A stretch of DNA of 63,974 nt, filler included, from Sluysia triapertura (taxonomy: Eukaryota), in NCBI GenBank assembly GCA_046118255.1. It is 4 parts of 4 records of this genome, joined end to end, with 100 filler letters (N's around TTAATTAATTAA, not from the genome) between each part and the next. Parts side by side here need not be neighbours in the genome. Positions count along the whole stretch, not along the records: positions 13,420 to 40,740 come from JBJNIA010044349.1; 3 more parts are not named here. One strand, written 5' to 3'. The notes under the pieces were generated by a model. That model saw nothing but the letters and a program-made list of their open reading frames with translations. It searched no databases and was not told the DNA's origin. Positions within the stretch are counted from its first letter, which is position 1; every line of letters starts with the position of its first letter. The position numbers were made by a program, and so were the translations under genes. Shown one piece after another: positions 19,601 to 34,906 of the stretch.

Positions 19601-20038
19601 CTATTTTATACTATTGTTAAATTTAGACATGATATTGTTTTCTAATTTTTGCATAATAAGTTTATTTTCTAGTTCTTCATGATCAAAATAAAATAAATGT
19701 AATATCCCATGACAAATCATAAAATATAATTCCTCTATCATTGAAGATGAATAATATTGAAATTGTTTATTAATTTGGTTCATTGATATGAATAATTCAC
19801 CTAATTCATGTTCTTGATTATTTGGGAAAGATAATATATCGGTGGTTTTATTTTTGTGTCGATAAGTATTATTTAAAAATGTCATATATTCATCATTAAT
19901 AAAAATAATAGAAATAGTATACTTACCTATATTTTTTTTATTAAGTTCTAATAAAACTAATTTAAAAAGTTTTTGAATATTATTTTTTATTTCTATATCC
20001 AGCTTGAATTGAGAGTCTTGATTGATAAAGTTAATCAT
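19601..20038 (-). CDS. ybeY: rRNA maturation endoribonuclease YbeY
   Basis: LNNTYRHKNKTTDILSF, LGELFIS, HGILHLFYFDH. Confidence 0.95.
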   Translation of the reverse strand: MINFINQDSQFKLDIEIKNNIQKLFKLVLLELNKKNIGKYTISIIFINDEYMTFLNNTYRHKNKTTDILSFPNNQEHELGELFISMNQINKQFQYYSSSMIEELYFMICHGILHLFYFDHEELENKLIMQKLENNIMSKFNNSIK

Positions 20039-21014
20039 TTAATTTAATTTTATATTGAAAAGTTTGAATTTCTTTACAAAATTTTAAGTAATTAAAAGAA
20101 TTAATAAAATTACTTATTATTATGAAAGCTATTAGGTTAATACTAATTACAGGAACATCAACATCTAATAATTGGAAAATTAAATACAATAATATGAAAA
20201 TAATAAATTCTAATCCTGAAACTTTCAATTTTTTGAGGTAATAAGTGATTATAGAAGCAAGAAATATAACAAAATAGTTTATTTGGTAACAATAAAAAAG
20301 ATTAATTAATATTATAAAAATAAGAAAAATTGATAAATTTACAAAATTTTTTATATCAATAAAAAATTTATTTAAATAATTATTTAGTAAGCAAAATATT
20401 ATAGTTAATAAAAATAATAAACATATCATAAATATGAAATTTTTATTAAATGTATCTATCAATAAAATTCTAGCAACAAACAACAAAATAATTAAAATTA
20501 ATTTGCTAGAAATATTAATAAACGTAGTAATTAAATATTTATAAAGCATAACTTTGTTATATTTAATGTTTTTATATGATAAGTAATAATTCTTTAAGTT
20601 TGTGTAATCAAATTTTTTTATATAAATAATCACATTTATATAATTTAGTAAAATGTCTTTAAAACTTATTTTAAAATAACCATTAATTGGACAAAAACAA
20701 TAAAAAATTTGATTAATTATTTTATAGCAAATAATAGCATGGAAACTGGATGGTTCTTTTTTTATTAAAATTATAGGAAATGCTAAATCTAATGATTGAA
20801 AAGTTGTTAAAGATATGTTTTTAATATATATTTTTGTGTTAAATTTTTTTAAAAATAATTCTAATTCATATAAGCTGATAGATTTATTTTTATAAATTAA
20901 TAACAAAAATTGTGGATAACCTATTAGGTTATTATATGAAACAAAATTAAATAATGAATAACAACAAGCAATTAGGCAATCATCAGCAAATAATTGTAAT
21001 TGAAATTTTGGCAC
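20031..21014 (-). CDS. Peptidase C39-like domain fused to TM helices, no ATPase domain
   Basis: QLQLFADDCLIAC resembles C39 Q-x-DCGxAC; FHAIICYKI...FCPING resembles HFVV...DPxxG; hydrophobic C-terminal half; overlaps the ybeY start. Confidence 0.6.
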   Translation of the reverse strand: MPKFQLQLFADDCLIACCYSLFNFVSYNNLIGYPQFLLLIYKNKSISLYELELFLKKFNTKIYIKNISLTTFQSLDLAFPIILIKKEPSSFHAIICYKIINQIFYCFCPINGYFKISFKDILLNYINVIIYIKKFDYTNLKNYYLSYKNIKYNKVMLYKYLITTFINISSKLILIILLFVARILLIDTFNKNFIFMICLLFLLTIIFCLLNNYLNKFFIDIKNFVNLSIFLIFIILINLFYCYQINYFVIFLASIITYYLKKLKVSGLEFIIFILLYLIFQLLDVDVPVISINLIAFIIISNFINSFNYLKFCKEIQTFQYKIKLND

Positions 21015-21068
21015 ACAAAATATAGTGTTTTTTATTTTATTAATAAATAAATAATTTAAAATATATAA

Positions 21069-21707
21069 ATGCCGAACAATAATTATATTGAAGTAAAATA
21101 TCCAAAAAAATTACAAGAAATTCAATTGTTATGAATTAAAGAATATCGCCACGTTATTATTTTGACATCAATTGCTTTATTATTTTTTATTTCTATTGTT
21201 ATATCAAATGCAGTTATTGATATTTACATTTTTAAAACATTATGAGATTCAAAAGCATACATTATCGAATTTAGCATTTTTATTTTTCTATTTGTTGTAA
21301 GTAATTTTTCACTATTTTGAATATATTTTTGAATGAAAAAAACCAAAGAAATAAATAAAATTCCGTGAGCTAGTTTGGGCTGTATTTTGTTGAATTTAGG
21401 ATGCTTTGTTTTATTAGTTGTTATGCTTATGCAACTGTATAGTCTTTTATTTTCAATAACTTTTAATTTCTTTGGCCAATTTACTGATTTACCAGTTTAT
21501 GGGAGACTTAGTTATAACCAAATATACAATATTCAAATGAATTTAATATATAGTAACATGGCATTTATTATTTTTTACATAATATATTTATTTATTTTAA
21601 GCATTAAAATATCCAAAATTAATCAATATCGCAGAATTATTTGAAACAATTATAATTCTAAATTTCAATGAATTAATAATGGTGAAACTACAAACAAACA
21701 AAAATAA
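21069..21707 (+). CDS. Hypothetical membrane protein, ~4 TM, 212 aa in code 4
   Basis: Open from ATG 21069 to TAA 21707 with TGA=Trp; only plus-strand gene found in this contig. Confidence 0.75.
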
Positions 21708-21827
21708 TAAGAATAATTTCCAATATCCAATGAAATATTAACCCATCATATGGACGAAATGGCTTTATTTATTGCGGAGATATTTTTATAATATGAAAGA
21801 TTAATTACTGCTACGTTTAGAATATTT

Positions 21828-23675
21828 CTATAAGGATTGACTGTTCTCGCTACTACTTACTTTTTCTGATTTCAATTTTAAATAAGTGTTGCGATATCAA
21901 AATCCTAATCCAAAAAGTCCAATTAATCCTCCGGCACCAAGAACAATTAAAACAATTGCTCATGTTGGGAAAACATTAATTGAATTACTAGGATTTGGTT
22001 GTGGTGGGATAGGTTTTACTGGTATTATGTTTGTTCCACTTCCGTTTGTATTGTCTATTATTGGTTTTTCAGACATTTTACCAATTTGCAATAAATATTG
22101 AATTTTATTTCCTAATTTATCTTGAAGGGTTATTAGATATTTTCCGTGCCCAGTAATGCTACCACTGTTTTTAATTATATTGGTTGGTTTTCCTTTAAGA
22201 ATAATTTGTTTATTTACCATATCACAACTCTGATAAGTAGATGTTGTTAAATCTAAAATCGGGTCATGGAAAATATAGTTTAAATTAGGTGTGCCATTAT
22301 CTCCTTGGACAAATAAGAAATTAATATTTTCTTTCCCTCAGTTATAATAACCTAAATATTGTGTTAATTTGCAAGTTTTATCAGTAGAAAAATTATTTGT
22401 TCATGGATCAATTGATTTTTTAATGTAAAAATGATAGCTTAATGAAAGCCCGTTTGTTTTGGATACAACAATATTAAAAATGCCTTTGTTATCTTTGTTT
22501 GTTAGAATACAACTAAAATCACCGGCATTAATATAATCTTTCCCGTTTATGATAATTTTATTAATTGAACTATCATTTACATAAAATAAAATGTCATCAT
22601 TAATAAATTTATAGGTTTGCCCTTGGTATAAAGAATCCACTTCTTTTCCATTGGTTCTATATTTTACACCTGAAAAACCTTCATCTGTAGATTTTCACAA
22701 ACCATTGCTAGCTGTTCCTGCTAAAATGTCACCAGATTTATCCTGATAAAACGATGATATGCTTCAATTACTTTTAAGCCCATTTGTTATTTGAGTGAAA
22801 TCAACCCCATTAGTAGAATTTCATAAACCATTATAATCTGATCCTACTCATATATTTCCAGATTTATCCTGAATAATCGATTGTATGCTTCAATTATTAC
22901 CGATATTCCCATGAACTTGAGCGAAATTTAACCCATCAGTAGATTTATATAAACCATTATAATAAGTACTAGTTCATATATCCCCTTTATTATCTTGGAT
23001 AATTGAAACTATGTCTCAATTACTTCCGATCTTTCCATGAACCTGAGTGAAATTTACTCCATCATTTGATTTATATAAACCTTTTTTTTCTGTTCCTACT
23101 CAAACATTTCCTGCGTTGTCTTGAAAAATTGAATCTATATATCAATCACTTCCGATACCGCCATTAACTTTATTAAAATTTAATCCATCGGTAGATTTTC
23201 ATAGGCCATTACCAGCAGTAACAAATCAAATATTACCTAATAAATCTTGATAAATGCTATTGATTATTGCTGAATTACTTCCAATTCCTCAATCAACTAA
23301 GAAAAAATAGATTCCGTCAGTAGATTTTCATAAGCCATGATAATCTGTTCCTACTCATATATTTCCAGATTTATCCTGAATAATTGATTGTATACTTCAA
23401 TCACTTCCGATGCCGTCAGATACTTTATTGAAATTTACTCCATCAGTAGATTTTAATAAGCCGTTGTTTGTTGTCCCAACTCAAATATTACTTTTGTTAT
23501 CTTGAAAAGTAATATTTATAGCTCAATTACTTCCAACCCCTCCAGCAACTTTATTAAAAGTGAAATCTGTTTTTTTAGATGAATGTGGAGAAATGTTATA
23601 GATCGCTTGTATAATTGACCCAAAACAAAAAACCAAAATTCCTATCATTCATAAACTAGTTAATAACTTTTTCAT
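21828..23675 (-). CDS. Beta-propeller surface protein, copy 1 (615 aa)
   Basis: AGGAG RBS; signal MKKLLTSLWMIGILVF; seven WxIxSIxQDKxGNIWVGTxxxGLWKSTDGxNF repeats; stalk; Pro-rich linker; TM WAIVLIVLGAGGLIGLFG. Confidence 0.9.
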
Positions 23676-23949
23676 ATTTACTCCTGTTATATCTTTTACA
23701 AATCAACCCATTATTTTTATGGATTTATAAAAAAAATAAAACATGAATAATTTTAAAATATTTTTGGTTTTTTATTAAATTTTTTTTCTATTTACTAACT
23801 ATTTACTAATTGCTTACTAATAATAAATTATGTTTTGTATGGTTTTTTATTGTCATAATTTTTAGTAAAATGTAGTATTACCGTTAATAAATTTATATGT
23901 TTTCCCTCGAAATGTAAATTATACTTACTTGTTCTTTGGTATCGTGCCC

Positions 23950-24957
23950 CTATATTGAATAATTTTCATCAGTATATTTGAAAAGCCCATGACCCCCGGT
24001 CACAACTCAAATATTTCCAACATTATCTTGATAAATTGATCGTATAGTTCAATCGTTTGCTAACCCTCCACTCACTTGAGTAAAATTCACTTCGTCTATA
24101 GATTTTCATAAACCATTTTGTTCTGATCCGACCCAAATATTTCCTAATTTATCCTGAAAAATTGAACATATGCTTAAATCACTTCCGATGCCCTCAGATA
24201 CTTTATTGAAATTTACTCCATAAGTAGATTTTCACAAGCCATTATGATTTGTCCCCACTCAAATATTTCCTAATTTATCTTGAAAAATTGAAGATATATA
24301 TCAATTACTTCCAACCCCTCCAGCTACCTGTGTAAAATTTTCACCATCAATAGATTTTCATAGGCCATTCATAAAAGTGCCCACTCAAATATTTCCTTTA
24401 TTATCTTGAGTAATTGAAAATATAACTAAATTTGTTCCAAATTCCCCACTCACTTGGGTAAAATTCACTCCGTTAGTAGATTTTCATAACCCGCCTTGAA
24501 TAGTCCCCACTCAAATATTCCCAGACTTATCTTGGATAATACTAGTTATTGTATAATTTTTAAAATAACCACATATATCAAAACTATTTCCCCCATTAGT
24601 AGATTTTCATAAACCATTCGCAAATGTACCAACTCAAATATTTCCTATTTTATCTTGAAAAATTAAGTATATACCAATATTAGTTCCTAACCCATTAGTT
24701 ATTTGAATAAAATGATTTCCCCCGTCAGTAGATTTATATAAACCATGTAAAAGAGTACCAACTCAAATATTTCCATCTTTATCTACTAAAGTAGAATTAA
24801 TTTGAATATTTGTTCCTATCCCACCATCTACTTTAGCAAAATTAAAATTTATTGTTTTTAAATTTTGTGAAATACTATTATAAGTAGCTTGAGTAATTGT
24901 CCCTGCCCCAAAACTTAAAATTCCTATCATTCCTAAACTAGTTAATCATTTTTTCAT
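23950..24957 (-). CDS. Beta-propeller protein, copy 2 (335 aa): signal + 7 blades only, stalk and anchor lost
   Basis: Frame ends at TAG right after blade 7 (HGLFKYTDENYSI*); out-of-frame stalk remnant GKTYKFINGNTTFY at ~23860-23945. Confidence 0.8.
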
Positions 24958-25056
24958 ATTTCTCCTTTGGAAATTATATTTTTAAATATGTATTATTATT
25001 AATAAAACATATGAATTATATATATTTTTAATATCAAAACAAGATTATATTTATAT

Positions 25057-25080
25057 AAAAAAAATAACCTTGCGGTTATT
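25057..25080 (-). terminator. Rho-independent terminator downstream of copy 3
   Basis: Minus strand AATAACC-GCAA-GGTTATT hairpin running into a T tract. Confidence 0.8.
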
Positions 25081-25295
25081 CTCAAATAAGATGCATTTTT
25101 TATATTTACAATTGTTTAGAACTTAAATTATTTTGAATCTTTTCTATAAACAGAAATAAATTTATCTATCGAGCAATTAGAAATAATTTTTTGTTTTGTT
25201 AATTTAAATTTTCATTAATAATAACAATATGAGATCAAATACTAATAATTTCTAAAGCTAATATATCTTATAAATAAGAATTATTATCACTTACA

Positions 25296-27101
25296 TTAGT
25301 TTTTCTCAGGTTTTTGTTTTTGATGAGTATTGCGATATCATAATCATCATCCTATTAATCCAATTAATGCTAAACCACCAAGAACAATTATTATAATTGC
25401 TCATACTGGGAAGGTGTTTGGAATAGTTTTTGGTATGTCAGGAACTAGTGTGCTTCCGTCATTACTTTTATCCCCAGCTTTTGGTATAACTGGCTTATCA
25501 GTTGTATGTCCTATTTGTAATAAATATTGAATGTTATTTCCTAATTTATCTTGAATAGTTATTAAATATAAACCATAAACTAGGGCAAGATTTCCTGCTT
25601 TCTGTAGATTGGTTGGCGTACCTACAGCAAGAATTTTGCCATTTTCAAATGTACACTTTTGATAAATGGAATTTGTTAAATCTAAAATTGGGTCATCTAA
25701 AGTATATTTTAGATTTGGCATACCATTGTCCCCTTGAACAAATAAAAAATTAATACTATCTTTCCCTCAATTGTATTGACCTAAATACTGGGTTAGTTTG
25801 TAAGCACTATCTATGGAAAATTGATTTGTAGAAGGGTCGATTGATTGTTTGATGTAGAAATAATAGCTTAATAAAAAACCACTTGTTTTTGTTACTACGA
25901 TAGTAAAAATACCTTTATTTTCTTTACTTGTTAATACATATTTAAAATCAGTAACATTAGTATGATCTACACCATTAATAGTGATTTTATTAACCTCACT
26001 ATTTTTTGAATAAAATGTAGTATCGCCATTAATAAATTTATATGTTTGCCCTTGAAATATAGATTCTACTTCTTTTGCTCCTTTGGTATCATACCCTATA
26101 CCTGAATAATTTTCACTAGTTGATTCTCACAAACCATGATTTCTTGTTCCCACTCAAACATTTCCCACATTGTCTTGAATAATTGAATCTATATATCAAT
26201 CACTGCCGATACCACCATTAACCTTATTAAAATTTAATCCATCAGTAGATTTTCATAAACCATTTTTATCACTTCCTAACCATATATTTCCGAACCTATC
26301 TTGAAAAATTCAGAATATATTTCAATTATTTCCTATCCCGCCATTTACTTGGGTAAAATTTACTCCATTAGTAGATTTTCAAAGACCATTCTGAACAACC
26401 CCAGCTCATATATTTCCGGATTTATCTTGAATAATTGAGTATATATCTCAACTACTTAATAACCCACCACTAACTTGGGTAAAATTTACTCCATCTGTAG
26501 ATTTTCATAAACCATTATTGCCGGTTCCAACTCATATATTTCCAGATTTATCTTGAATAATTGAGTATATAATTCAATTATTTCCTATTCCACCATTAAC
26601 TTGACTAAAATTTGTTCCATCACTAGATTTTCACAAACCATTAAAACTTGTTCCCACTCAAATATTCCCTTTATTATCTTGAAAAATATTAATAATATAT
26701 CCGATATTATTTCCAACAATTACTTTGGTAAAATTTACTCCATCTGTGGATTTTCATAAACCATTACTGTTGGTTGCAACTCATATATTTCCAGATTTAT
26801 CTTGAATAATTGATAATATACTTCAATTAATTTCTAACCCGCCATTTACTTGGGTAAAATTTACTCCATTAGTAGATTTTCATAAACCATTTTTTTCAGT
26901 CCCTACTCAAAGAGTTCCGTTTTTATCTTGAAAAGTAGAATATATTGATCAATTACTTTCAATGCCGCCACCAATATTTGTAAAAGTAAAATTTACATCC
27001 TTTAAAGATTGTGAAACAATATTATAAGTAGCTTGAGTAATAGTTCCCACACCAAAACTTAAAATTCCTATCATTCCAAAACTAGCTAATAATTTTTTCA
27101 C
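25296..27101 (-). CDS. Beta-propeller surface protein, copy 3 (601 aa, GTG start)
   Basis: MKKLLASFGMIGILSFGVGTITQATYN; seven blades; stalk; TM; tail WWLWYRNTHQKQKPEKN*. Confidence 0.9.
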
Positions 27102-27145
27102 ATTTATTCCTAAATATTTTTTTATTATCTTTATACACTATTCTA

Positions 27146-27151
27146 ATTATA
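27146..27151 (-). promoter_or_regulatory. Putative -10 box (TATAAT) for copy 3
   Basis: AGAGTATAATT, conserved with the upstream region of copy 6. Confidence 0.5.
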
Positions 27152-27394
27152 CTCTTTGCTGCGTTTACTAACTATTTATTGAGTAATTAATTATATTTTT
27201 GTTTATTAATTTTAATTACTCAATAATAATTATTAAATAGTTATAAATAGGCATTGTAGTTAAAATAACTATAATGCCAAGAAATTATGCCTTGTTTTAT
27301 ATGATTTATAAAACTGAATAAAGCTATTTATATGAAATCAAATACTAATAATTTCTAAAGCTATTATGGATTATAGAAATTATTATCACTTACA

Positions 27395-29206
27395 TTAGTG
27401 TTTCTCAGGTTTTTGTTCTTGACGAGTTTTGCGATATCAGAATCATCATCCTATTAATCCAATTAATGCTAAACCACCAAGAATAATTATTATAATGGCT
27501 CATACTGGGAAGGCATTGGAAATAGTTTTTCCAGGAACTAGTTGGTCTCCGCTGTCATTTTTATCATTATCCCTTGGTATAACTGGTTTATCGGTAGATT
27601 TAGCAATTTGTAATAAATACTGAATTTTATTTCCTAGTTTATCTTGAATAGTAATTAAATATAATCCATAACCAGCAATCATTCCAGGTTGCACTAGATT
27701 AATTGGTTTCCCTACAACAAGAATTTTGCCATTTTCAAATGTACAATCTTGATAAGTTGAATTTGTTAAATCTAAAATTGGGTCATTTAAAGTATATTTT
27801 AGACTTGGAATACCAGTATCACCTCGGAGGAATAAAAAATTAATGTTATCTTGCCCTCAATCATATTTACCTGAATATTGTGCTAAAGTATTTGGGGAAT
27901 CAGCAAAAAATGCATTTGTTGATGGATCGATCGCTTGTTTAATATAAAAATAATAACTTAATGTAAGTTTATTTGTTTTTGTTACAACGATAGTAAAAAT
28001 ACCTTTGTCTTCTTTGCTTGTTAAAGTATATTTAAAATCACTAACATCAGTATAGTCTTTCCCATTTATGGTAATTTTATTAACCTGACTATTTTTTGAG
28101 TAAAAATCAGTATTACCATTAATGAATTTATATGTTTGACCATTAAATACAGATTCAACTTCTTTTGCCCCTCTAGTATCGTACCCCACCCCAACAAAAC
28201 TTTCATCAATTGATTCTCATAAACCGTTGTCTTTAGTACTAACTCAAATATCTCCGTCTTTATCTTGATAAAGTGATGCTATATTTCATTGGTTTCCTAA
28301 CCCACCACCAACTAGATTAAAATTCACTCCATCAGTAGATTTTCATAAACCATTTAGAGCTGTCCCGAATCATATGTCTCCTATTTTATCTTGTAAAATT
28401 GTATCTACATAAATCTCACTAGGTAAATTTCCTCCTGTAAATATTTTAAAATTTACTCCATCGGTAGATTTTCATAAACCATATATGCCTGCCCCAACTC
28501 AAATATTCCCGGCCTTATCTTGGTAAAGTTCTACTATATTTCAACTACTTCCGATTCCTCCACCAACTTTGTTAAAACTTATTCCTCCATTAGTTGTTTT
28601 AAATAGTCCATTTCGTTCTGTCCCAACTCAAATATTTCCAGTTTTATCTTGAAACACCATATTTATATTTCAATTACTTCCAATGATTCCATTACTAATT
28701 ATTTGTGTAAAATTCAATCCATCAGTAGATTTTCATAGACCATTACCTCAAGTTGAGACTCAAATATTTCCGGCTTTATCTTGAAATAATGATTGTATAT
28801 CCCAATTACTCCCGATTCCCCCACCAACTTTGGTAAAATTTACACCATTGCCAGATTTTCATAAACCTTCAGAAAAGGTTGCCACTCAAATATTGCCAAA
28901 TGTATCAATAATAGCTGAATATATATTTCAATTACTTCCGATTCCCCCGCCTACTTGGGTAAAATTCACTCCATTAGTAGATTTTCATAAACCATTCTTT
29001 CATGTTCCTACTCATATAGTTCCGGACTTATCTTGCAAAGTAAATCTTATATTTCAATTACCCCCAATTCCCCCGCCTACTGATTTAAAAGTAAAATTTA
29101 TATCTTTTAAAGATTGGGAAACAATATTATAAGTGGCTTGGGTAATTGTTCCTACGCCAAAACTTAAAATACCTATGATGCTCATGTTAGATAATAATTT
29201 CTTCAT
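27395..29206 (-). CDS. Beta-propeller surface protein, copy 4 (603 aa)
   Basis: AGGAG RBS; MKKLLSNMSIIGILSFGVG; same architecture; start and stop in frame. Confidence 0.9.
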
Positions 29207-29214
29207 ATTGCTCC

Positions 29215-29520
29215 TAATATTATTTATTATACTTGGTTTTTTAATAGTATTTTCCCCTCTATTACTGTTCTATTTCAAATAAATAATTTCTTTTTTGATA
29301 TTAAAATGAATGATTTTAAATGTGTTTTAAAATTTAAATTTTTATTGTTAATCATACATGGATAATTAACATAAAACTTACAATAATAGTTAAAGTTAAA
29401 ATAACTAGAATTACAAAAGTAATTACTGTAATTATTTAAATAATTAATAGAACCGATGAAACTATCTATATAAGATCAAAACCAATAATTTCTAAAGCTA
29501 TTATGGATTATAGAAATTAT
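29215..29520 (-). pseudogene. Frameshifted remnant of the small membrane gene at 31348-31767
   Basis: Shared blocks AGTTAAAATAACTAGAATTA, TTTTAAAATTTAAATTTTTATT and GATATTAAAAT; FVILVILT segment followed by stops. Confidence 0.65.
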
Positions 29521-29531
29521 TATTAGTTATA

Positions 29532-31334
29532 TTAGTTTTTCACGGATTTTTGTTTTTGATGAGTATTACGATATCACAATCATCATCCTATTAATCCGAT
29601 TAATACTGACCCACCAAGAACAATTATCACAATGGCTCACACCGGGAAGGAATTAGCAGTAGGTTTTGCAGGTAATATTGTTGTTCCGTTTTCGTTTTTA
29701 GATACTACTGGTTTATCAGTTGTTTTACCAATTTGTAATAAATATTGAATTTTATTTCCTAATTTATCTTGAATAGTTATTAAATATAAACCATGACCTG
29801 GGGCAATGCTTCCAGGATTATTTGCTAGATTAGTTGGCTTTCCTACAACAAGAATTTTTCCATTTTCAAACGTACATTCTTGATAAGTGGAATTCGTTAA
29901 ATCTAAAATTGGATCATTTAAGGTATATGTTAGATTTGGTGTACCTTTATCCCCTTGAAGAAATAAAAAATTAATGTTATCTTGCCCTCAATCGTATACA
30001 ACTGAATATTGAGATAACTTATAATTATTGTCAGTAGAAAAGATATTTGTTGACGGATCAATTGTTTTTTTAATGTAAAAATAATAGTTCAATGTAAGAT
30101 TATTTGTTTTGGTTACAACAATATTAAAAATACCTTTATTTTCTTTATTTGTTAAAGTATATTTAAAATCAGCAACATTAGTATGATCTTTCCCATTTAT
30201 CGTAATTTTATTAACTGAACTATTTTTTGAGTAAAATGTAGTATCACTATTGATAAATTTATATGTTTGCCTTTGAAATGTGGATTCTACTTCTTTTCCT
30301 CCATTGGTATTGTACCCTACACCCGAAAAACCTTCATCGGTAGATTTTCATAAACCATAGGATTGTGTTGATACTCAAATATCTCCAACATTATCTTGAT
30401 AAATTGAATTTATACCTCAATTAATTGCTAATCCTCCGCTAACTTGGGTAAAATTTACTCCATCTGTAGATTTTCATAAACCCTTATTCGTTGCAAATCA
30501 AATGTTGCCAATTTTATCTTGGCAAATTAAATATATGAAAGAAATACTACCAATATTCCCGGTAATTTTGTTAAATGTTTTTCCATCATCTATAGACTTT
30601 CATAAACCATTACCCGTAACTCCTACTCATATATTTCCGGTCTTATCTACACATATACTATCTATGCTTCAATTGATTTCAATACCTCCACTAACTTGTA
30701 TAAAATTTATTCCATCAGTAGATTTTCAAAGACCATTCATAGAAGTCCCTACTCAGTAATTACCTTTATTATCCTGAGTAATTGGAGTTATGTCTCAGCC
30801 ACTACTTGCACTAGAGCCCACATTTACTCGTTCAAAAGTTTTTCCATCATCTGATTTATATAAACCGTGCCCACTAGTTCCAACTCAAATATTTCCTAAT
30901 TTATCTTGAAACAAGTAATTTACATTCCAACTGGTTACTAATCCGCTACCTATTTGAGTGAAAGTTACTCCATCATTAGTTGATTTTCATAAACCATTAT
31001 CTCGCGTGCCAACTCAAATATTACCTAACTTATCTTGAAGCATTGTTTGTATATGTCAATCTTTACCTATTAGACCGGTTATTTGTGTAAAATTCACTCC
31101 ATCAGTAGATTTTCATAAACCTTTTCCGCCAGGGGCAACTCAAATATTCCCTAACTTATCTTGAAAAGTAAAAATTATTCTTCAACTACTTTCAATACCA
31201 CCACTAACTTGCGTAAAAGTAAAATTTATATCTTTTAGAGTTTGAGAAACAATGTTATAAGTGGCTTGGGTAATTGTTCCTACGCCAAAACTTAAAATAC
31301 CCACCATTCCCAAACTAGCTAATATTTTTTTCAT
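29532..31334 (-). CDS. Beta-propeller surface protein, copy 5 (600 aa)
   Basis: AGGAG RBS; MKKILASLGMVGILSFGVG; same architecture; absent from the ORF track because of frequent TGA-Trp. Confidence 0.9.
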
Positions 31335-31347
31335 ATTTACTCCTACA

Positions 31348-31767
31348 CTATTTACTTATTATATTTAGTTCTTCATTATATTTTTTTACTTGATATCATT
31401 CTTCTCCAAATAAATAATGTTCTTTCTGAATATTAAAATAAGTTCTTTGAAATCTATTTTTAAAATTTAAATTTTTATTTTTTAATCATTCATTAATAAT
31501 CAATACAGCACTTATAATGGCCATTATAGTTAAAATAACTAGAATTATAAAAGGAATTGGTATAGTACTTAATGGATTATAGAAGCTTGTAAAAACATCT
31601 GTATTAACCAATAAACTAATAAACGCTAAAATTATAAAGTTTGCTATTACAAACCGAATATAAAAGAAAATTCAAACATATTTAATTTTGTATTTAAAAA
31701 ATGTATTAATAGTGAATTTAATAGGATAATAAAAAATGTATTTTAATATCTTAAATATTATTGACAT
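31348..31767 (-). CDS. Small membrane protein (139 aa in code 4), 2-3 TM, immediately upstream of copy 5
   Basis: MSIIFKILKYIFYYP...PFIILVILTIMAIISAVLIINEWLKNKNLNF...NIISK*; stop abuts the RBS of copy 5. Confidence 0.7.
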
Positions 31768-31981
31768 ATATCTTATTTTACAACTTTTTACTTAGTGTAT
31801 TTTAGAGTTATTTATTTTATTTATCATATAAACAATTATTTATTCAATAAATTAACTAATAATGATATATTACTCTAGTAATATCATAACTAACTCAACA
31901 CATTTAACATTTTTCAATATAGTTAATTATTTATTTTTGCAACTTAATTAACTAACTTTGTTAATTTAAAATATTTTGTTC

Positions 31982-33820
31982 TTATAAATGAGAATTTTTA
32001 TTTTTACTATAAGTGTTTTCTTGATTTTGTTTTTTATGAGAACGGCGATAAAACAGCAATCATCATATTAAACCAATTAATGCTATGCCACCAAGAACAA
32101 TCAATACAATTGCCCACACTGGGAAGGTATTATTGGAAACAGGTTTTGGTATATCTGGGGATACCGGCTCTGGGGGGTTATTTTTATCCTCAGGGTTAGG
32201 TATAACTGGCTTATCGGTGGTTTTCCCAATTTGTAATAAATATTGAATTTTATTTCCGATTTTATCTTGAATAGTTACTAGATATAAACCATAACCTGGG
32301 GCAATGCTTCCAGTTTGCATTAGATTAGTTGGTTTCCCTACGGCAAGAATTTTGCCATTTTCAAATGTGCAACTTTGATAAGTAGAATTCGTTAAATCTA
32401 AAATTGGGTCATTTAAAATATATTTTAGACCCGGCGAGCCACTATCTCCTTGGAGGAATAAAAAATTAATGTTATCTTGCCCTCAATCATATTTACCTGA
32501 ATATTGTGCTAAATTATTTTGGGATTCAGTAGAAAAGACATTTGTTGCTGGGTCAATCGCTTTTTTAATGTAAAAATAATAGTTTAATGAAAGGCCATTT
32601 GTTTTGGATACAACAATATTAAAAATACCATTGTTTTCTTTGTTTGTTAATGTATAGTTAAAATCACCAGTATTAGCATGATCTTTCCCATTTATTGTAA
32701 TTTTATCAATTGTACTATTCTTTACATAAAATTTAGCATCGTCACTTATAAATTTATATGTTTGACCCTGATATGTGGATTCTATTTCTTTTCCTGAGGT
32801 AGTGTATCCAACTCCAGTAAAATTTTCGTCTGTAGATTTTCACAAACCCTCATTCATTGTTCCTACTAATATATTATCTTTATTGTCTTGATAAATAGAA
32901 TATAGCATCCAATCATTTCCGATTCCTCCACCAACTTGGGTAAAATTTGTTCCATCCGTAGATTTTCATAGGCCTTTGACACCTGTTCCGACTCACAAGA
33001 ATCCCATTTTATCTTGAAATATTGAGAATATGGTTTCTGTAGCTGGTATTCCGCTAGTTACTTTGGTAAAAGAATTTCCCCCATTAGTAGATTTTCATAA
33101 GCCATCCTCTGATCCGACCCAAATATTTCCTAATTTATCCTGAAAAAGTGATTTTATAGTTAATTTACTTGTTATCCCACCACTAACTTGAGTAAAATTT
33201 ACACCATTAGTAGATTTTCATAGGCCTTTGTTATTTATTCCTGCCCACATATTTCCATTTTTATCTTGAAGCAAACTATTTATCGGTCAACCGATTCCTA
33301 TTTCAAAGCCAACTTGAAAAAAATCAGAGCCTCCATTAGTAGATTTTCATAAGCCATTATTGGCTGTTCCAATAAATATATGCTCATTTTGATTTATATA
33401 TAAGCTTTGTATGCTTCAATCTAATCCTATCATCTTGCCAACTTGGGTAAAATTCACTCCATCAGTAGATTTTCACAAACCATTACCTTGAGTACCCACT
33501 CATAAATTACCCGTTTTATCTTGACATAGATTTGAAATATTTCAATCCTTCCCAATTCCTCCACCAACTTGGGTAAAATTAACTCCGTCAGTAGATTTTC
33601 ATAAACCGTTACTAATAGTTGCAACTCAAATATTTCCATTTTTATCTTGAAAAATATTATATATTGTTCATTTACTTCCGATTCCCGCAGATACTTTATT
33701 AAAAGTAAAATTTACATCCTTTAAAGATTGCGAAACAATATTGTAAGTAGCTTGAGTAATTGTCCCAACACTAAAACTTAGGATTCCTATCATTCCTAAA
33801 CTAGTTAATCATTTTTTCAT
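31982..33820 (-). CDS. Beta-propeller surface protein, copy 6 (612 aa)
   Basis: AAGGA RBS; MKKWLTSLGMIGILSFSVG; seven blades; stalk; linker IPNPEDKNNPPEPVSPDIPKP; TM. Confidence 0.9.
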
Positions 33821-33864
33821 AGTCATCCTTAAATATTTTTTATTATCTTTAATAATCTATTTTA

Positions 33865-33870
33865 ATTATA
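33865..33870 (-). promoter_or_regulatory. Putative -10 box (TATAAT) for copy 6
   Basis: AGAGTATAATT about 45 nt upstream of the start codon. Confidence 0.5.
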
Positions 33871-33910
33871 CTCTTCGTTATATTTGACTAACTATTTACT
33901 TAGGAATTAA

Positions 33911-34906
33911 TTATATTTTTGTTGACTTTTTTTGATCGTCAAACTTATCATATGCCTTAACTATTTCTTTAACAAGTGGATTACGAACAATATCTCCTTC
34001 TGTTAATTTAACTAACTTAATGCTCTTAACATTTTTTAATATATTTAATGCGGATAACAATCCAGAAACGACATTAAATTTTAAATCTATTTGAGTAATA
34101 TCCCCTGTAATAACCATTTTGCTATTAAATCCAAGTCTTGTTAAAAATAATTTCATTTGATTAAAATTACTATTTTGGGCTTCATCTAAAATTACAAAGC
34201 AATTATCAAATGTTCTTCCGCGCATAAAGGCAAGGGGGGCTATTTCAATAACATTTGTTTTTAATAAATTCTCAGTTTTTTCTTTTCCTAGAATAAAATA
34301 CAAAGAATCATATAAAGGAATCAAATAAGGGTCAATTTTTTCTTTTAATCCACCTGGTAAGAATCCTAACTCTTCTCCTGCTTCGATAGCTGGTCTAGAT
34401 AAAATAATTTTTTTAATTAAGTTACTTTTAAGCATCTCGATTGCATAAACCATTGCAATAAATGTTTTCCCAGAACCAGCCGGTCCAATACAAAAAATTA
34501 ATTCATTGTTTTGTAATATATTTAAATATTCAACTTGTCCTAATGTTTTAGGATAAATTTTTCGACCCTCATAATTTGATGTAATTGGCTTTTCATATAG
34601 CTCTTTTATTTCATCTTTTTTATCATCTTCTAGTATATTTTTGTTATTTGAACATAAATAATTAATATCTCATGAACGAATTTTATTAGATTTATCTTTA
34701 TTTGATATATCTATTAATGTTTTTATAATAGAAAGTACTTTTTTAGCTTTCTCTTCACTATCAGCATTAATAATAATGTATGATGGTTGAATTTCTATGA
34801 ATGTATTTGTTTTTTCTTCTAATAGATTAATGTTTCGGTTATTAACACCAACTACATTAGTAATATTTTGAATTATTGGGTCTATATTATATTTAAATGG
34901 TTTCAT
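33911..34906 (-). CDS. phoH: PhoH-like ATPase, 331 aa in code 4
   Basis: GPAGSGKT, RPAIEAGEELGFLPG, LAFMRGRT, ILDEAQN, GDITQIDL; joined through TGA at 34670. Confidence 0.97.

What the first reader, a model, noticed from the sequence alone, without database searches (positions are those of the whole stretch)
22834..26256. Out-of-register blade exchange within and between paralogs
Seen: blade 4 of copy 1 (~23098-23203; LNFNKVNGGIGSDWYIDSIFQDNAGNVWVGT) is nearly identical in DNA to blade 7 of copy 3 (~26152-26256; ...WYIDSIIQDNVGNVWVGT), including the variable residues Y and D. Blades 2 and 6 of copy 1 (23341-23400 vs 22834-22893) differ at only a few bases. The blade 1-2 linker of copy 1 (~23400-23453) matches the blade 5-6 linker of copy 2 (~24179-24232). 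Blade number nevertheless stays at seven. Inference: gene conversion or recombination shuffles single blades, giving a combinatorial mechanism without an obvious dedicated recombinase.
Basis: partly seen in the sequence, partly recalled or inferred. Interest (0 to 1): 0.8.

Follow-up and report, generated by a model that had tools for sequence, protein, structure and literature searches.

The report
Blade-to-blade gene conversion in propeller paralogs
Six neighbouring genes of a mycoplasma-like bacterium encode surface proteins with seven-bladed propellers, and a few short DNA stretches have been copied between blades at different positions, a known form of repeat evolution rather than a dedicated shuffling machine.

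Summary
All three matches sit at the stated coordinates (98/106, 57/60 and 52/54 identical bases) with flanks at about 50% identity.

The piece reads with TGA as Trp (Mollicutes-like, 25% GC). It holds six tandem minus-strand paralogs, c1 to c6. Each has a signal peptide and seven 126-nt Reg_prop blades (PF07494). Five also have an uncharacterised C-domain and a membrane anchor; c2 is cut off after blade 7.

A scan of all blade registers against a column-shuffle null found seven significant tracts of 42-230 nt at 80-100% identity. All seven are out of register: three within a gene and four between genes. Synonymous sites and a nested mosaic in c1 blade 2 argue for shared descent, not convergence.

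- Tracts are sub-blade to two-blade pieces that end in conserved motif cores. They are not modular blades.
- They are few and mostly diverged.
- Most blades are roughly equidistant, in a star-like pattern.
- I found no switch, silent-cassette system, reverse transcriptase or recombinase.

The best reading is sporadic homologous gene conversion among repeats. This kind of evolution is already described for fungal WD-repeat paralogs. The protein family itself is nearly an orphan: I found one distant relative array.

The parts
21828..23675 (-). Paralog c1, 615 aa under code 4: signal peptide, 7 blades (22677-23561), C-domain, C-terminal membrane anchor.
   Evidence: Code-4 ORF and translation; blade segmentation.
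23950..24957 (-). Paralog c2, truncated to 335 aa: signal peptide plus 7 blades (23962-24843). The stop follows blade 7. It keeps its own ribosome-binding site and ATG.
23859..23926 (-). Decayed remnant of the start of a C-domain downstream of the c2 stop. The rest of that copy is deleted.
   Evidence: the repeat finder family D12, 85% identical to 26004-26071; three-frame reading.
25296..27101 (-). Paralog c3, 601 aa, GTG start. Blades at 26109-26987, with a two-blade DNA period of 249-252 nt at about 80% matches.
27395..29206 (-). Paralog c4, 603 aa. Blades at 28199-29092.
29532..31334 (-). Paralog c5, 600 aa. Blades at 30330-31220.
31982..33820 (-). Paralog c6, 612 aa. Blades at 32822-33706.
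23091..23210 (-). Tract 1, c1 side: from the end of blade 3 through blade 4 to its GNVWVGT core. 120 nt, 91% identical to 26145-26264 (offset +3 blades).
   Evidence: (score 24.4, 0/200 shuffles).
26145..26264 (-). Tract 1, c3 side: end of blade 6 through blade 7.
   Evidence: The pair c1b4+c3b7 is the best supported clade of the blade tree (73% bootstrap).
23340..23401 (-). Tract 2, c1 blade 2 side. 62 nt, 95% identical to 22833-22894 in c1 blade 6 (offset +4 blades, same gene).
   Evidence: (score 22.8, 0/200).
22833..22894 (-). Tract 2, c1 blade 6 side.
23321..23546 (-). Tract 3, c1 blades 1-2 side. 226 nt, 82% identical to 24099-24324 in c2 blades 5-6. Core 23395-23442 vs 24173-24220 is 96% identical. 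Tract 2 is nested inside it.
   Evidence: (p 0.005).
24099..24324 (-). Tract 3, c2 blades 5-6 side.
26722..26934 (-). Tract 4, c3 blades 1/2 side. 213 nt, 83% identical to 26473-26685 (offset +2 blades). Core 26727-26813 vs 26478-26564 is 94% identical.
   Evidence: (score 19.1, 0/200).
26473..26685 (-). Tract 4, c3 blades 3/4 side.
26838..26881 (-). Tract 5. 44 nt identical to 26337-26380 (c3 blades 1/2 vs 5/6).
   Evidence: p 0.005.
26470..26519 (-). Tract 6. c3 blades 4/5 vs c5 blades 6/7 (30439-30488). 50 nt, 98% identical.
   Evidence: p 0.005.
24124..24165 (-). Tract 7. c2 blade 6 vs c6 blade 5 (33110-33151). 42 nt, 98% identical.
   Evidence: p 0.02.
27827..27887 (-). In-register conversion tract in the C-domain, c4 vs c6 (32453-32513): 21 consecutive matching polymorphic sites.
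   Evidence: permutation p 0.0005; 0.005 after correction for 10 pairs.
25291..25418 (-). 3' end of c3 including its stop. 93% identical in register to 27390-27517 (c4) and 87% to 29527-29654 (c5), above the roughly 80% of the rest of the C-domain.
   Evidence: the repeat finder family D10.

Best explanation
The region is a chromosomal tandem array of six paralogous genes on the minus strand, read with TGA as Trp. It lies between phoH and ybeY in a Mollicutes-like genome.

Each gene encodes a signal peptide and a seven-bladed Reg_prop-type beta-propeller. Five of the six also encode an uncharacterised beta-rich C-domain and a C-terminal membrane anchor. These are probably surface ligand-binding proteins.

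At DNA level the blades are 126-nt repeats, about 65% identical on average. They share 20-30 nt conserved cores that code for the GNIWVGT-type and GLWKSTDG-type motifs. Ordinary homologous recombination can pair any blade with any other at these cores. That could be short-tract, non-reciprocal gene conversion or template switching at repeats.

Occasionally 40-230 nt are copied from one blade to another, irrespective of register, inside one gene or between genes. Conversion overwrites and does not insert, so the count stays at seven. Any product with another count would probably not close into a ring and would be lost. The same process acts in register on the non-repeated parts (signal peptide, C-domain, 3' end).

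Shown: the tracts, their significance, the synonymous-site signal, the mosaic, and the absence of a dedicated enzyme in the scanned pieces.

Inferred: the recombination pathway, the direction and age of each event, selection for seven blades, and the surface location and function of the proteins.
For: Gene models and genetic code:
- Table-11 ORFs break at every conserved Trp, while table 4 gives six long ORFs and intact housekeeping genes.
- Single blades reach Pfam Reg_prop PF07494 at 21.9-23.1 bits, against a cut-off of 20.4.

Out-of-register tracts:
- Seven segments exceed the family-wise 5% threshold of a column-wise codon shuffle. All seven have a non-zero blade offset.
- They were verified on raw ungapped diagonals, with flank identity of 0.22-0.58.
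- No in-register propeller segment is significant.

Descent rather than convergence:
- Among the 15 blade pairs with the highest amino-acid identity, the excess of identical synonymous codons is concentrated in the tract pairs. Examples: c3b2-c3b4 29/33 vs 21.7 expected; c1b4-c3b7 25/31 vs 19.2; c1b2-c2b6 25/30 vs 19.7.
- Equally similar consensus-like pairs show no excess (c1b6-c3b4 22/32 vs 21.3).

Mosaic:
- In c1 blade 2, 15 of 17 informative sites in an inner stretch of about 65 nt favour c1 blade 6.
- 30 of 34 outer informative sites favour c2 blades 5/6.
- 0 of 200 permutations reach this clustering.

Blade tree:
- The best supported clades are out-of-register pairs (73, 63 and 60% bootstrap). 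There is no clade by position.

General conversion in the family:
- In-register tracts are found in the C-domain and the signal peptide.
- The 3' ends of c3 and c4 are 93% identical.

No dedicated machinery:
- Neighbouring genes are rsmE, bcp, phoH, ybeY, era, recO, cdd, glyS and dnaG.
- There are no long simple repeats upstream of any copy.
- There are no blade-like cassettes elsewhere in the piece.
Against: - Only one genome is available, so donor, recipient and age cannot be assigned. Population-level mosaic alleles are untested.
- Assembly correctness cannot be checked without reads.
- The shuffle null treats alignment columns as independent. Covariation among residues of blade subtypes could inflate some scores, although it would not explain the synonymous signal.
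- The seven tracts do not explain why in-register blades are no closer at synonymous sites than any two blades (pS 0.528 vs 0.538), while C-domains of the same gene pairs are closer. That needs either older, now blurred exchanges or later in-register homogenisation of the flanks.
- The two-blade period of c3 could come from unequal crossing-over rather than conversion.
Confidence: 0.7

Rival explanations
1. There was no exchange. The shared stretches reflect purifying or convergent selection on the blade motif together with the strong A/T codon bias of a 25% GC genome.
For: - Much of the blade similarity is of this kind. Identical amino acids use the identical codon in 64.6% of all blade pairs.
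- Many nearest neighbours are simply the most consensus-like blade, c3b4.
- Several pairs with high amino-acid identity show no synonymous excess.
Against: - The column-preserving shuffle keeps motif and codon bias, yet never reaches the observed values.
- Tract pairs share hypervariable residues and synonymous codons beyond column expectation.
- Identity drops sharply at the tract ends, and c1 blade 2 is a mosaic.
Confidence: 0.07
2. The tracts are assembly chimeras, caused by short reads mis-threaded through 126-nt repeats.
For: The array is highly repetitive, the provenance of the piece is unknown, and no reads are available.
Against: - Six of the seven tracts carry mismatches (80-98% identity). 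The only exact one is 44 nt, shorter than a read.
- Mis-threading would give exact identity followed by a switch to the other copy's flank. It would not give a diverged island, or a nested island within an island.
- All six reading frames stay open with seven blades each.
Confidence: 0.05
3. Blade turnover came from unequal crossing-over: duplication of one or two blades followed by loss of others, with selection restoring seven. Under this view conversion is not needed.
For: - c3 has a two-blade period of 249-252 nt at about 80% over 2.9 units, and c1 has a weaker one of 255 nt at 71%.
- c3 blades 2, 4, 5 and 6 are mutually 77-87% identical.
- Repeated re-amplification of blades is documented for propellers in general (PMC9218822).
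Against: - Four of the seven tracts link different genes at non-integer gene offsets and are shorter than a blade.
- The nested mosaic in c1 blade 2 needs overwriting, not duplication.
- No copy has a blade number other than seven.
Confidence: 0.12
4. The array is a programmed diversification system. The paralogs and the truncated c2 serve as a cassette reservoir for frequent segmental conversion that varies a surface propeller. This would resemble MgPa repeats or vlhA pseudogenes in mycoplasmas.
For: - It is a surface-protein array in a Mollicutes-like genome.
- One truncated copy takes part in two tracts.
- Each blade has five hypervariable columns.
Against: - Five copies are complete, and all six keep a ribosome-binding site and a start codon.
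- The tracts are few and mostly diverged.
- omega is 0.32-0.45 in the propeller, as in the C-domain. pN/pS is about 1 at the hypervariable columns, not above it.
- No phase-variable repeats or recombinase were found.
Confidence: 0.06

Closest known systems
HNWD (het-d/het-e/het-r) WD-repeat paralogs of Podospora anserina (Paoletti 2007, PMC1805685; Chevanne 2010, PMC2873952)
   Same: The repeats code for beta-propeller blades of about 42 residues. Repeat sequence is exchanged both within and between paralogs, so repeats do not cluster by position or gene. A handful of hypervariable positions per blade sit between conserved cores. No dedicated enzyme is involved.
   Different: - The fungal repeats are far more alike, and their number varies widely between alleles. 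Here blades are about 65% identical in DNA and the number is fixed at seven in all six copies.
- Positive selection is shown there and not here.
- The blade family differs (WD40 vs Reg_prop), as does the host (eukaryote vs code-4 bacterium) and the location (intracellular NLR vs membrane-anchored surface protein).
Highly repetitive beta-propellers re-amplified from single blades (Pereira and Lupas 2022, PMC9218822)
   Same: Propellers whose blades are still recognisably alike in sequence, alongside relatives with fully differentiated blades. Here that relative is the array on L001.
   Different: - That work explains symmetry by amplification and says nothing about later exchange: 'gene conversion' and 'recombination' occur 0 times in its text.
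- Its threshold is a median blade identity above 60%. These genes have 48-60%.
Segmental gene conversion in mycoplasma surface proteins (MgPa repeats of M. genitalium, reviewed in PMC9262362; vlhA of M. synoviae, from my own knowledge)
   Same: A Mollicutes-type genome. Paralogous or partial copies of a surface-protein gene exchange segments by homologous recombination without a dedicated recombinase.
   Different: Those systems have one expression site plus silent partial cassettes, exchange in register, and vary within a culture or an infection. Here five complete genes sit in tandem, the significant exchanges are out of register between internal repeats, and nothing shows current activity.
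Reg_prop propellers of Bacteroidota hybrid two-component sensors (Pfam PF07494 with Y_Y_Y PF07495)
   Same: The blade motif passes the Pfam threshold. The order propeller, beta-rich domain, membrane span is the same.
   Different: There is one propeller, not two. There is no Y_Y_Y hit in the C-domain and no kinase or regulator modules. After the membrane anchor the proteins end in a short tail.

Membership tests
Pfam Reg_prop (PF07494) beta-propeller repeat | The repeat unit matches the model at or above its gathering score. | tested here: met
   Stop-free single-blade pieces score 23.1, 22.8 and 21.9 bits against a cut-off of 20.4. Two further pieces score 16.7 and 15.0. The relative P0002 scores 20.8.
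Pfam Reg_prop (PF07494) beta-propeller repeat | The units fold into a closed seven-bladed propeller. | tested here: inconclusive
   Each of the six genes has seven motif-bearing units. No usable model could be made. The AlphaFold model of the relative P0002 has pLDDT 34.
Hybrid two-component sensor (Reg_prop + Y_Y_Y + kinase) | A Y_Y_Y domain and cytoplasmic signalling modules follow the propeller. | tested here: not met
   The C-domain pieces hit no Pfam family at E<=0.01 and no NCBIfam family. The proteins end 15-30 residues after the membrane span.
Repeat arrays under concerted evolution within and between paralogs (HNWD type) | Repeats do not cluster by position or by gene. | tested here: met
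   - Mean nucleotide identity is 0.662 for same position, 0.656 for same gene and 0.648 for neither.
- pS is 0.528, 0.523 and 0.538 for the same three classes.
- There are no positional clades in the neighbour-joining tree.
Repeat arrays under concerted evolution within and between paralogs (HNWD type) | Discrete exchanged tracts are shared by repeats of different genes or positions. | tested here: met
   Seven tracts are significant family-wise, and all are out of register. There is a mosaic in c1 blade 2.
Repeat arrays under concerted evolution within and between paralogs (HNWD type) | Repeats have very high internal identity, and repeat number varies. | tested here: not met
   Median blade identity is 0.52 in amino acids and 0.65 in nucleotides. 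All six copies have seven blades.
Repeat arrays under concerted evolution within and between paralogs (HNWD type) | A few surface positions are under positive diversifying selection. | tested here: inconclusive
   Five columns have entropy above 3.2 bits with pN/pS of 0.75-1.16. Synonymous sites are close to saturation. No structure is available to place the columns.
Mycoplasma-type antigenic variation by conversion from silent cassettes | One expression site plus promoterless or partial donor copies. | tested here: not met
   Five copies are full length. The one truncated copy keeps its signal peptide, ribosome-binding site and ATG.
Mycoplasma-type antigenic variation by conversion from silent cassettes | Variant mosaics occur within a population. 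| not testable with these tools
   Only one assembled sequence is available. The exact RecO protein of this genome is not on record in the contig collection, and no close relative was found.
Diversity-generating retroelement or site-specific shufflon | A reverse transcriptase with template repeat, or a recombinase with inverted sites. | tested here: not met
   No such Pfam domain was found in the ORF pieces scanned across 13420-40740. The tracts are direct repeats, not inverted ones. Several ORFs could be scanned only in part because of their TGA codons.

The most novel reading that the evidence does not exclude
The array, including the anchorless copy c2, could be a standing reservoir from which a host-associated Mollicute re-assorts sub-blade segments of a surface propeller on population time scales. 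Conversion in any register would multiply the number of binding-face variants while the fold stays at seven blades. That would be a propeller-based counterpart of the MgPa/vlhA conversion systems.
Probability: 0.1. Interest if true: 0.65.

Novelty: new member of a known kind. Interest (0 to 1): 0.35.

Why it matters
This is a clean bacterial example of homologous gene conversion acting between the internal repeats of a closed-ring fold in any register, within and between tandem paralogs, without changing repeat number. It also shows that most of the 'neither by position nor by gene' pattern in such arrays can come from old, motif-constrained divergence. Recent shuffling accounts for only a small part of it.

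The protein family is practically undescribed. It combines a Reg_prop propeller, an uncharacterised C-domain and a membrane anchor. I found it in two code-4 arrays only, so it may mark an unexplored kind of Mollicutes surface protein.

Tried and rejected
Searches for relatives:
- I searched with the C-domain alignment A1 in genome contigs, metagenome contigs and the word-index protein search. All found nothing.
- A DNA pattern for two blade motifs with TGA as Trp gave one chance hit in metagenome contigs: L082, 36.5% GC, with no blades.
- The full profile search of 1.84 billion representatives gave one true relative, P0002. The other two hits, a CheA-like protein and a Calx-beta giant protein, I judged spurious.
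- A word search with P0002 added only a kinase with Reg_prop/Y_Y_Y domains.

Taxonomy:
- A PhoH piece against genome contigs gave at best 65% identity, spread over Mollicutes MAGs and unrelated phyla.
- The exact RecO protein is not on record.

Structure:
- The model of P0002 alone has pLDDT 34.
- The C-domain piece modelled with 5 sequences has pLDDT 47; it is all-beta but unreliable.
- I did not run fold search, because models this poor give meaningless matches.
- A sequence search of PDB gave only GH74 xyloglucanase at E 0.07.

Limits of the tools:
- The tools translate references with table 11, so the full-length window proteins, which contain TGA as Trp, could not be handed to the family, structure or look-up tools. 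Only stop-free pieces were used.
- All code-4 work was done in scripts on the window itself.

Other points:
- My first synonymous test on the tracts is circular, because the tracts were chosen by nucleotide identity. I replaced it with pairs chosen by amino-acid identity.
- I rejected a well-mixed pool model in which frequent conversion alone erases position. By my rough estimate, an exponential coalescent with the observed mean divergence would give on the order of a hundred near-identical blade pairs. Seven are seen.

Full report
**What the piece is**

The usable piece (13420-40740) has 18-31% GC. Under table 11 the stretch 21000-34000 holds only short ORFs, each ending at a TGA that follows a Trp-like context. 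Under table 4 the same stretch gives six long minus-strand ORFs, and the flanking housekeeping genes also become whole.

The neighbours, identified from stop-free pieces, are dnaG, glyS, cdd, recO, era and ybeY on one side and phoH, an AhpC/TSA-family peroxiredoxin (bcp-like) and rsmE on the other. The array therefore sits inside a conserved chromosomal cluster of a code-4, Mollicutes-like bacterium. I could not name the organism:
- a PhoH scan of species representatives gave at most 65% identity;
- the window's RecO is not on record in the contig collection.

**The genes**

There are six paralogs:

| Copy | Coordinates | Note |
|---|---|---|
| c1 | 21828-23675 | complete |
| c2 | 23950-24957 | truncated after blade 7 |
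| c3 | 25296-27101 | complete |
| c4 | 27395-29206 | complete |
| c5 | 29532-31334 | complete |
| c6 | 31982-33820 | complete |

Each begins with a signal peptide followed by seven units of 41-44 residues (123-132 nt, mostly 126). Single units that happen to be free of TGA reach the Pfam gathering score of Reg_prop, PF07494.

Five copies continue with a domain of about 240 residues that has no Pfam or NCBIfam match, then a membrane span and a short tail. Copy c2 stops after blade 7. A decayed remnant of the next domain lies just downstream at 23859-23926, and the rest of that copy is deleted. All six copies keep a ribosome-binding site and a start codon. No upstream region has a simple repeat longer than 8 nt.

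**Relatives**

The family is close to an orphan. Pattern scans of species genomes and metagenomes, and the word-index search, found nothing.

A profile search of 1.84 billion representatives with the C-domain found one true relative, P0002. It aligns end to end with c3 at 27% identity. It lies on a 6.3-kb Logan contig (L001, 31% GC, also code 4) that carries at least four tandem paralogs of the same architecture.

In that array the paralogs are only 24-29% identical to each other. Their blades are fully differentiated: Tandem Repeats Finder sees no blade-period repeat. In the window it finds 126-nt arrays in five of the six genes (all but c5), and a 249-252-nt two-blade period at about 80% matches in c3. 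Blade homogeneity is therefore a feature of the window's lineage and not of the family.

All three matches are present:

| Match | Identical bases |
|---|---|
| 23098-23203 vs 26152-26257 | 98/106 |
| 22834-22893 vs 23341-23400 | 57/60 |
| 23400-23453 vs 24178-24231 | 52/54 |

Identity falls sharply outside them.

**Is it more than motif conservation and codon bias?**

This check matters because identical residues use the identical codon in 64.6% of all blade pairs. I aligned the 42 blades by codon and shuffled codons within columns. That keeps the motif and the codon bias but removes linkage between columns.
- The observed top pair (0.873) and the number of pairs at 0.80 or more (7) exceed all 300 shuffles. 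The shuffle maxima were 0.85 and 2.
- A log-odds scan of every gene pair at every blade offset gave seven segments above the family-wise 5% threshold. Every one is out of register.

The seven segments link:
- c1 b3/4 with c3 b6/7
- c1 b2 with c1 b6
- c3 b2 with c3 b4
- c1 b1/2 with c2 b5/6
- c3 b1/2 with c3 b5/6
- c3 b4/5 with c5 b6/7
- c2 b6 with c6 b5

With a more tolerant score some tracts extend to 213-230 nt at 80-83% identity.

**Descent or convergence?**

I chose blade pairs by amino-acid identity alone, so that the test is not circular. The excess of identical synonymous codons then appears in the tract pairs and not in equally similar consensus-like pairs.

c1 blade 2 is a nested mosaic. 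Its outer part follows c2 blades 5/6, and an inner stretch of about 65 nt follows c1 blade 6. Informative sites split 15 of 17 inside against 4 of 34 outside, and 0 of 200 permutations reach this clustering.

Its best supported clades are out-of-register pairs, at 73, 63 and 60% bootstrap. No clade corresponds to a position or to a gene.

First, the tracts are not blades. Tract 1, for example, runs from the GLWKS-type core at the end of blade 3 to the GNVWVGT core of blade 4. The others also cross unit borders. The conserved cores are the only long stretches of near identity between blades, so they are the natural places for pairing and resolution. That last step is inference.

Second, the events are few and not fresh. 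There are seven tracts among 861 blade pairs. Their identity is 80-98%, apart from one exact 44-mer.

Third, the lack of positional signal is mostly old.
- Synonymous difference is the same in register (pS 0.528) and out of register (0.538), with only blade 1 lower at 0.42.
- The probability of the same codon given the same residue is 0.658 for in-register blades of c3-c6, 0.646 for any two blades, and 0.772 for the C-domains of the same genes. The saturation level is about 0.55-0.58.
- Propeller dS is 0.7-1.1, against 0.4-0.7 in the C-domain for c3-c6. omega is similar in both (0.31-0.47), so I see no sign of gene-wide diversifying selection.

Two readings fit these numbers. The non-repeated flanks may have been homogenised in register after the duplications: significant in-register tracts exist in the C-domain and the signal peptide, and the 3' ends reach 93% identity. 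Alternatively, older out-of-register overwriting has since been blurred. One genome cannot separate these readings. By my rough estimate, a well-mixed pool maintained by frequent conversion would predict far more near-identical pairs than are seen.

Fourth, nothing suggests a dedicated system.
- No recombinase, reverse transcriptase or transposase domain was found in the scanned pieces.
- There are no blade cassettes outside the array.
- There are no phase-variable repeats.

recO lies 3 kb away, but in its usual place next to era.

**Hypervariable positions**

Five alignment columns per blade carry more than 3.2 bits of entropy between invariant cores, with pN/pS near 1. This resembles a variable binding face. 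However, it does not demonstrate positive selection, and I have no reliable structure to place the columns on.

**Comparison with what is known**

Exchange of propeller-blade repeats within and between paralogs, with hypervariable positions and no special enzyme, is described for the WD-repeat HNWD genes of Podospora (PMC1805685, PMC2873952). There the repeats are much more alike and their number varies.

Propellers with still-similar blades next to differentiated relatives are described as re-amplification products (PMC9218822). That paper does not discuss later exchange, and these genes fall at or below its 60% identity threshold.

Mycoplasma surface-protein systems exchange segments from partial copies (PMC9262362), but they do so in register and from silent cassettes.

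The present case is therefore a new member of a known kind. Its special points are a fixed blade number, exchange in any register, a Reg_prop propeller, and an almost orphan family in a code-4 genome.

**Limits of this work**

- Full-length window proteins contain TGA codons and could not be given to the family, structure or look-up tools by reference. Only stop-free pieces were used there, and code-4 translations were made in scripts.
- Both structure models were of low confidence, so no fold search was run.
- The assembly cannot be verified without reads. The tracts are diverged, and one is nested in another, which argues against chimeric assembly.

**Verdict**

This is ordinary homologous gene conversion among internal repeats of tandem paralogs, acting sporadically. 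Interest is moderate.

Noticed in passing
window 13420-40740: The whole piece uses TGA as Trp. Table-11 ORF calling shatters nearly every gene, while table 4 restores them. GC is 18-31%. Any annotation made with the standard bacterial code would miss the array entirely.
   Followed up: yes
window 23950-24957 and 23859-23926: Copy c2 is a propeller-only gene with an intact 335-codon frame, signal peptide and ribosome-binding site, but no C-domain or anchor. A decayed remnant of the C-domain lies just downstream. Five of its seven blades have lost the Trp that is conserved in 31 of 41 blades at alignment column 15. It may be a secreted product or a decaying copy.
   Followed up: partly
window 31348-31791; 29325-29424; 27189-27288: The spacer between c6 and c5 holds a 147-codon ORF for a small hydrophobic protein. 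The c5-c4 and c4-c3 spacers hold decayed copies of part of it (76% and 60% identity). The duplicated unit therefore once included this small gene.
   Followed up: partly
window 20031-21110: A membrane-protein ORF next to the array has a weak match (29 bits, cut-off 500) to the N-terminal part of the NCBIfam model for Mbov_0121-type peptidase-domain ABC transporters of mycoplasmas. It covers only about half of the model and is perhaps a fragment.
   Followed up: no
L001 1-6327 (Logan SRR31861032): This is the only relative found. It is a second code-4 contig (31% GC) with at least four tandem paralogs of the same architecture. The paralogs are 24-29% identical to each other, and their blades are fully differentiated. 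One of them (772-2139) also ends early, inside the C-domain.
   Followed up: partly
window 26228-26945 and 22807-23550: c3 has a two-blade DNA period of 249-252 nt at about 80% matches, and c1 a weaker one of 255 nt at 71%. This points to duplication or conversion of blade pairs, not only of single blades.
   Followed up: partly
window 25242-25464, 27341-27563, 29478-29700: Similarity between c3, c4 and c5 continues past the stop codons into the downstream spacers, and the last 128 nt of the genes are 87-93% identical. In-register homogenisation therefore extends beyond the coding sequence.
   Followed up: no
window 21069-21707 (+ strand): This is the only plus-strand ORF of the neighbourhood (212 codons, hydrophobic). 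It overlaps the 5' end of the minus-strand ORF 20031-21110. No family match was found for the piece tested.
   Followed up: no
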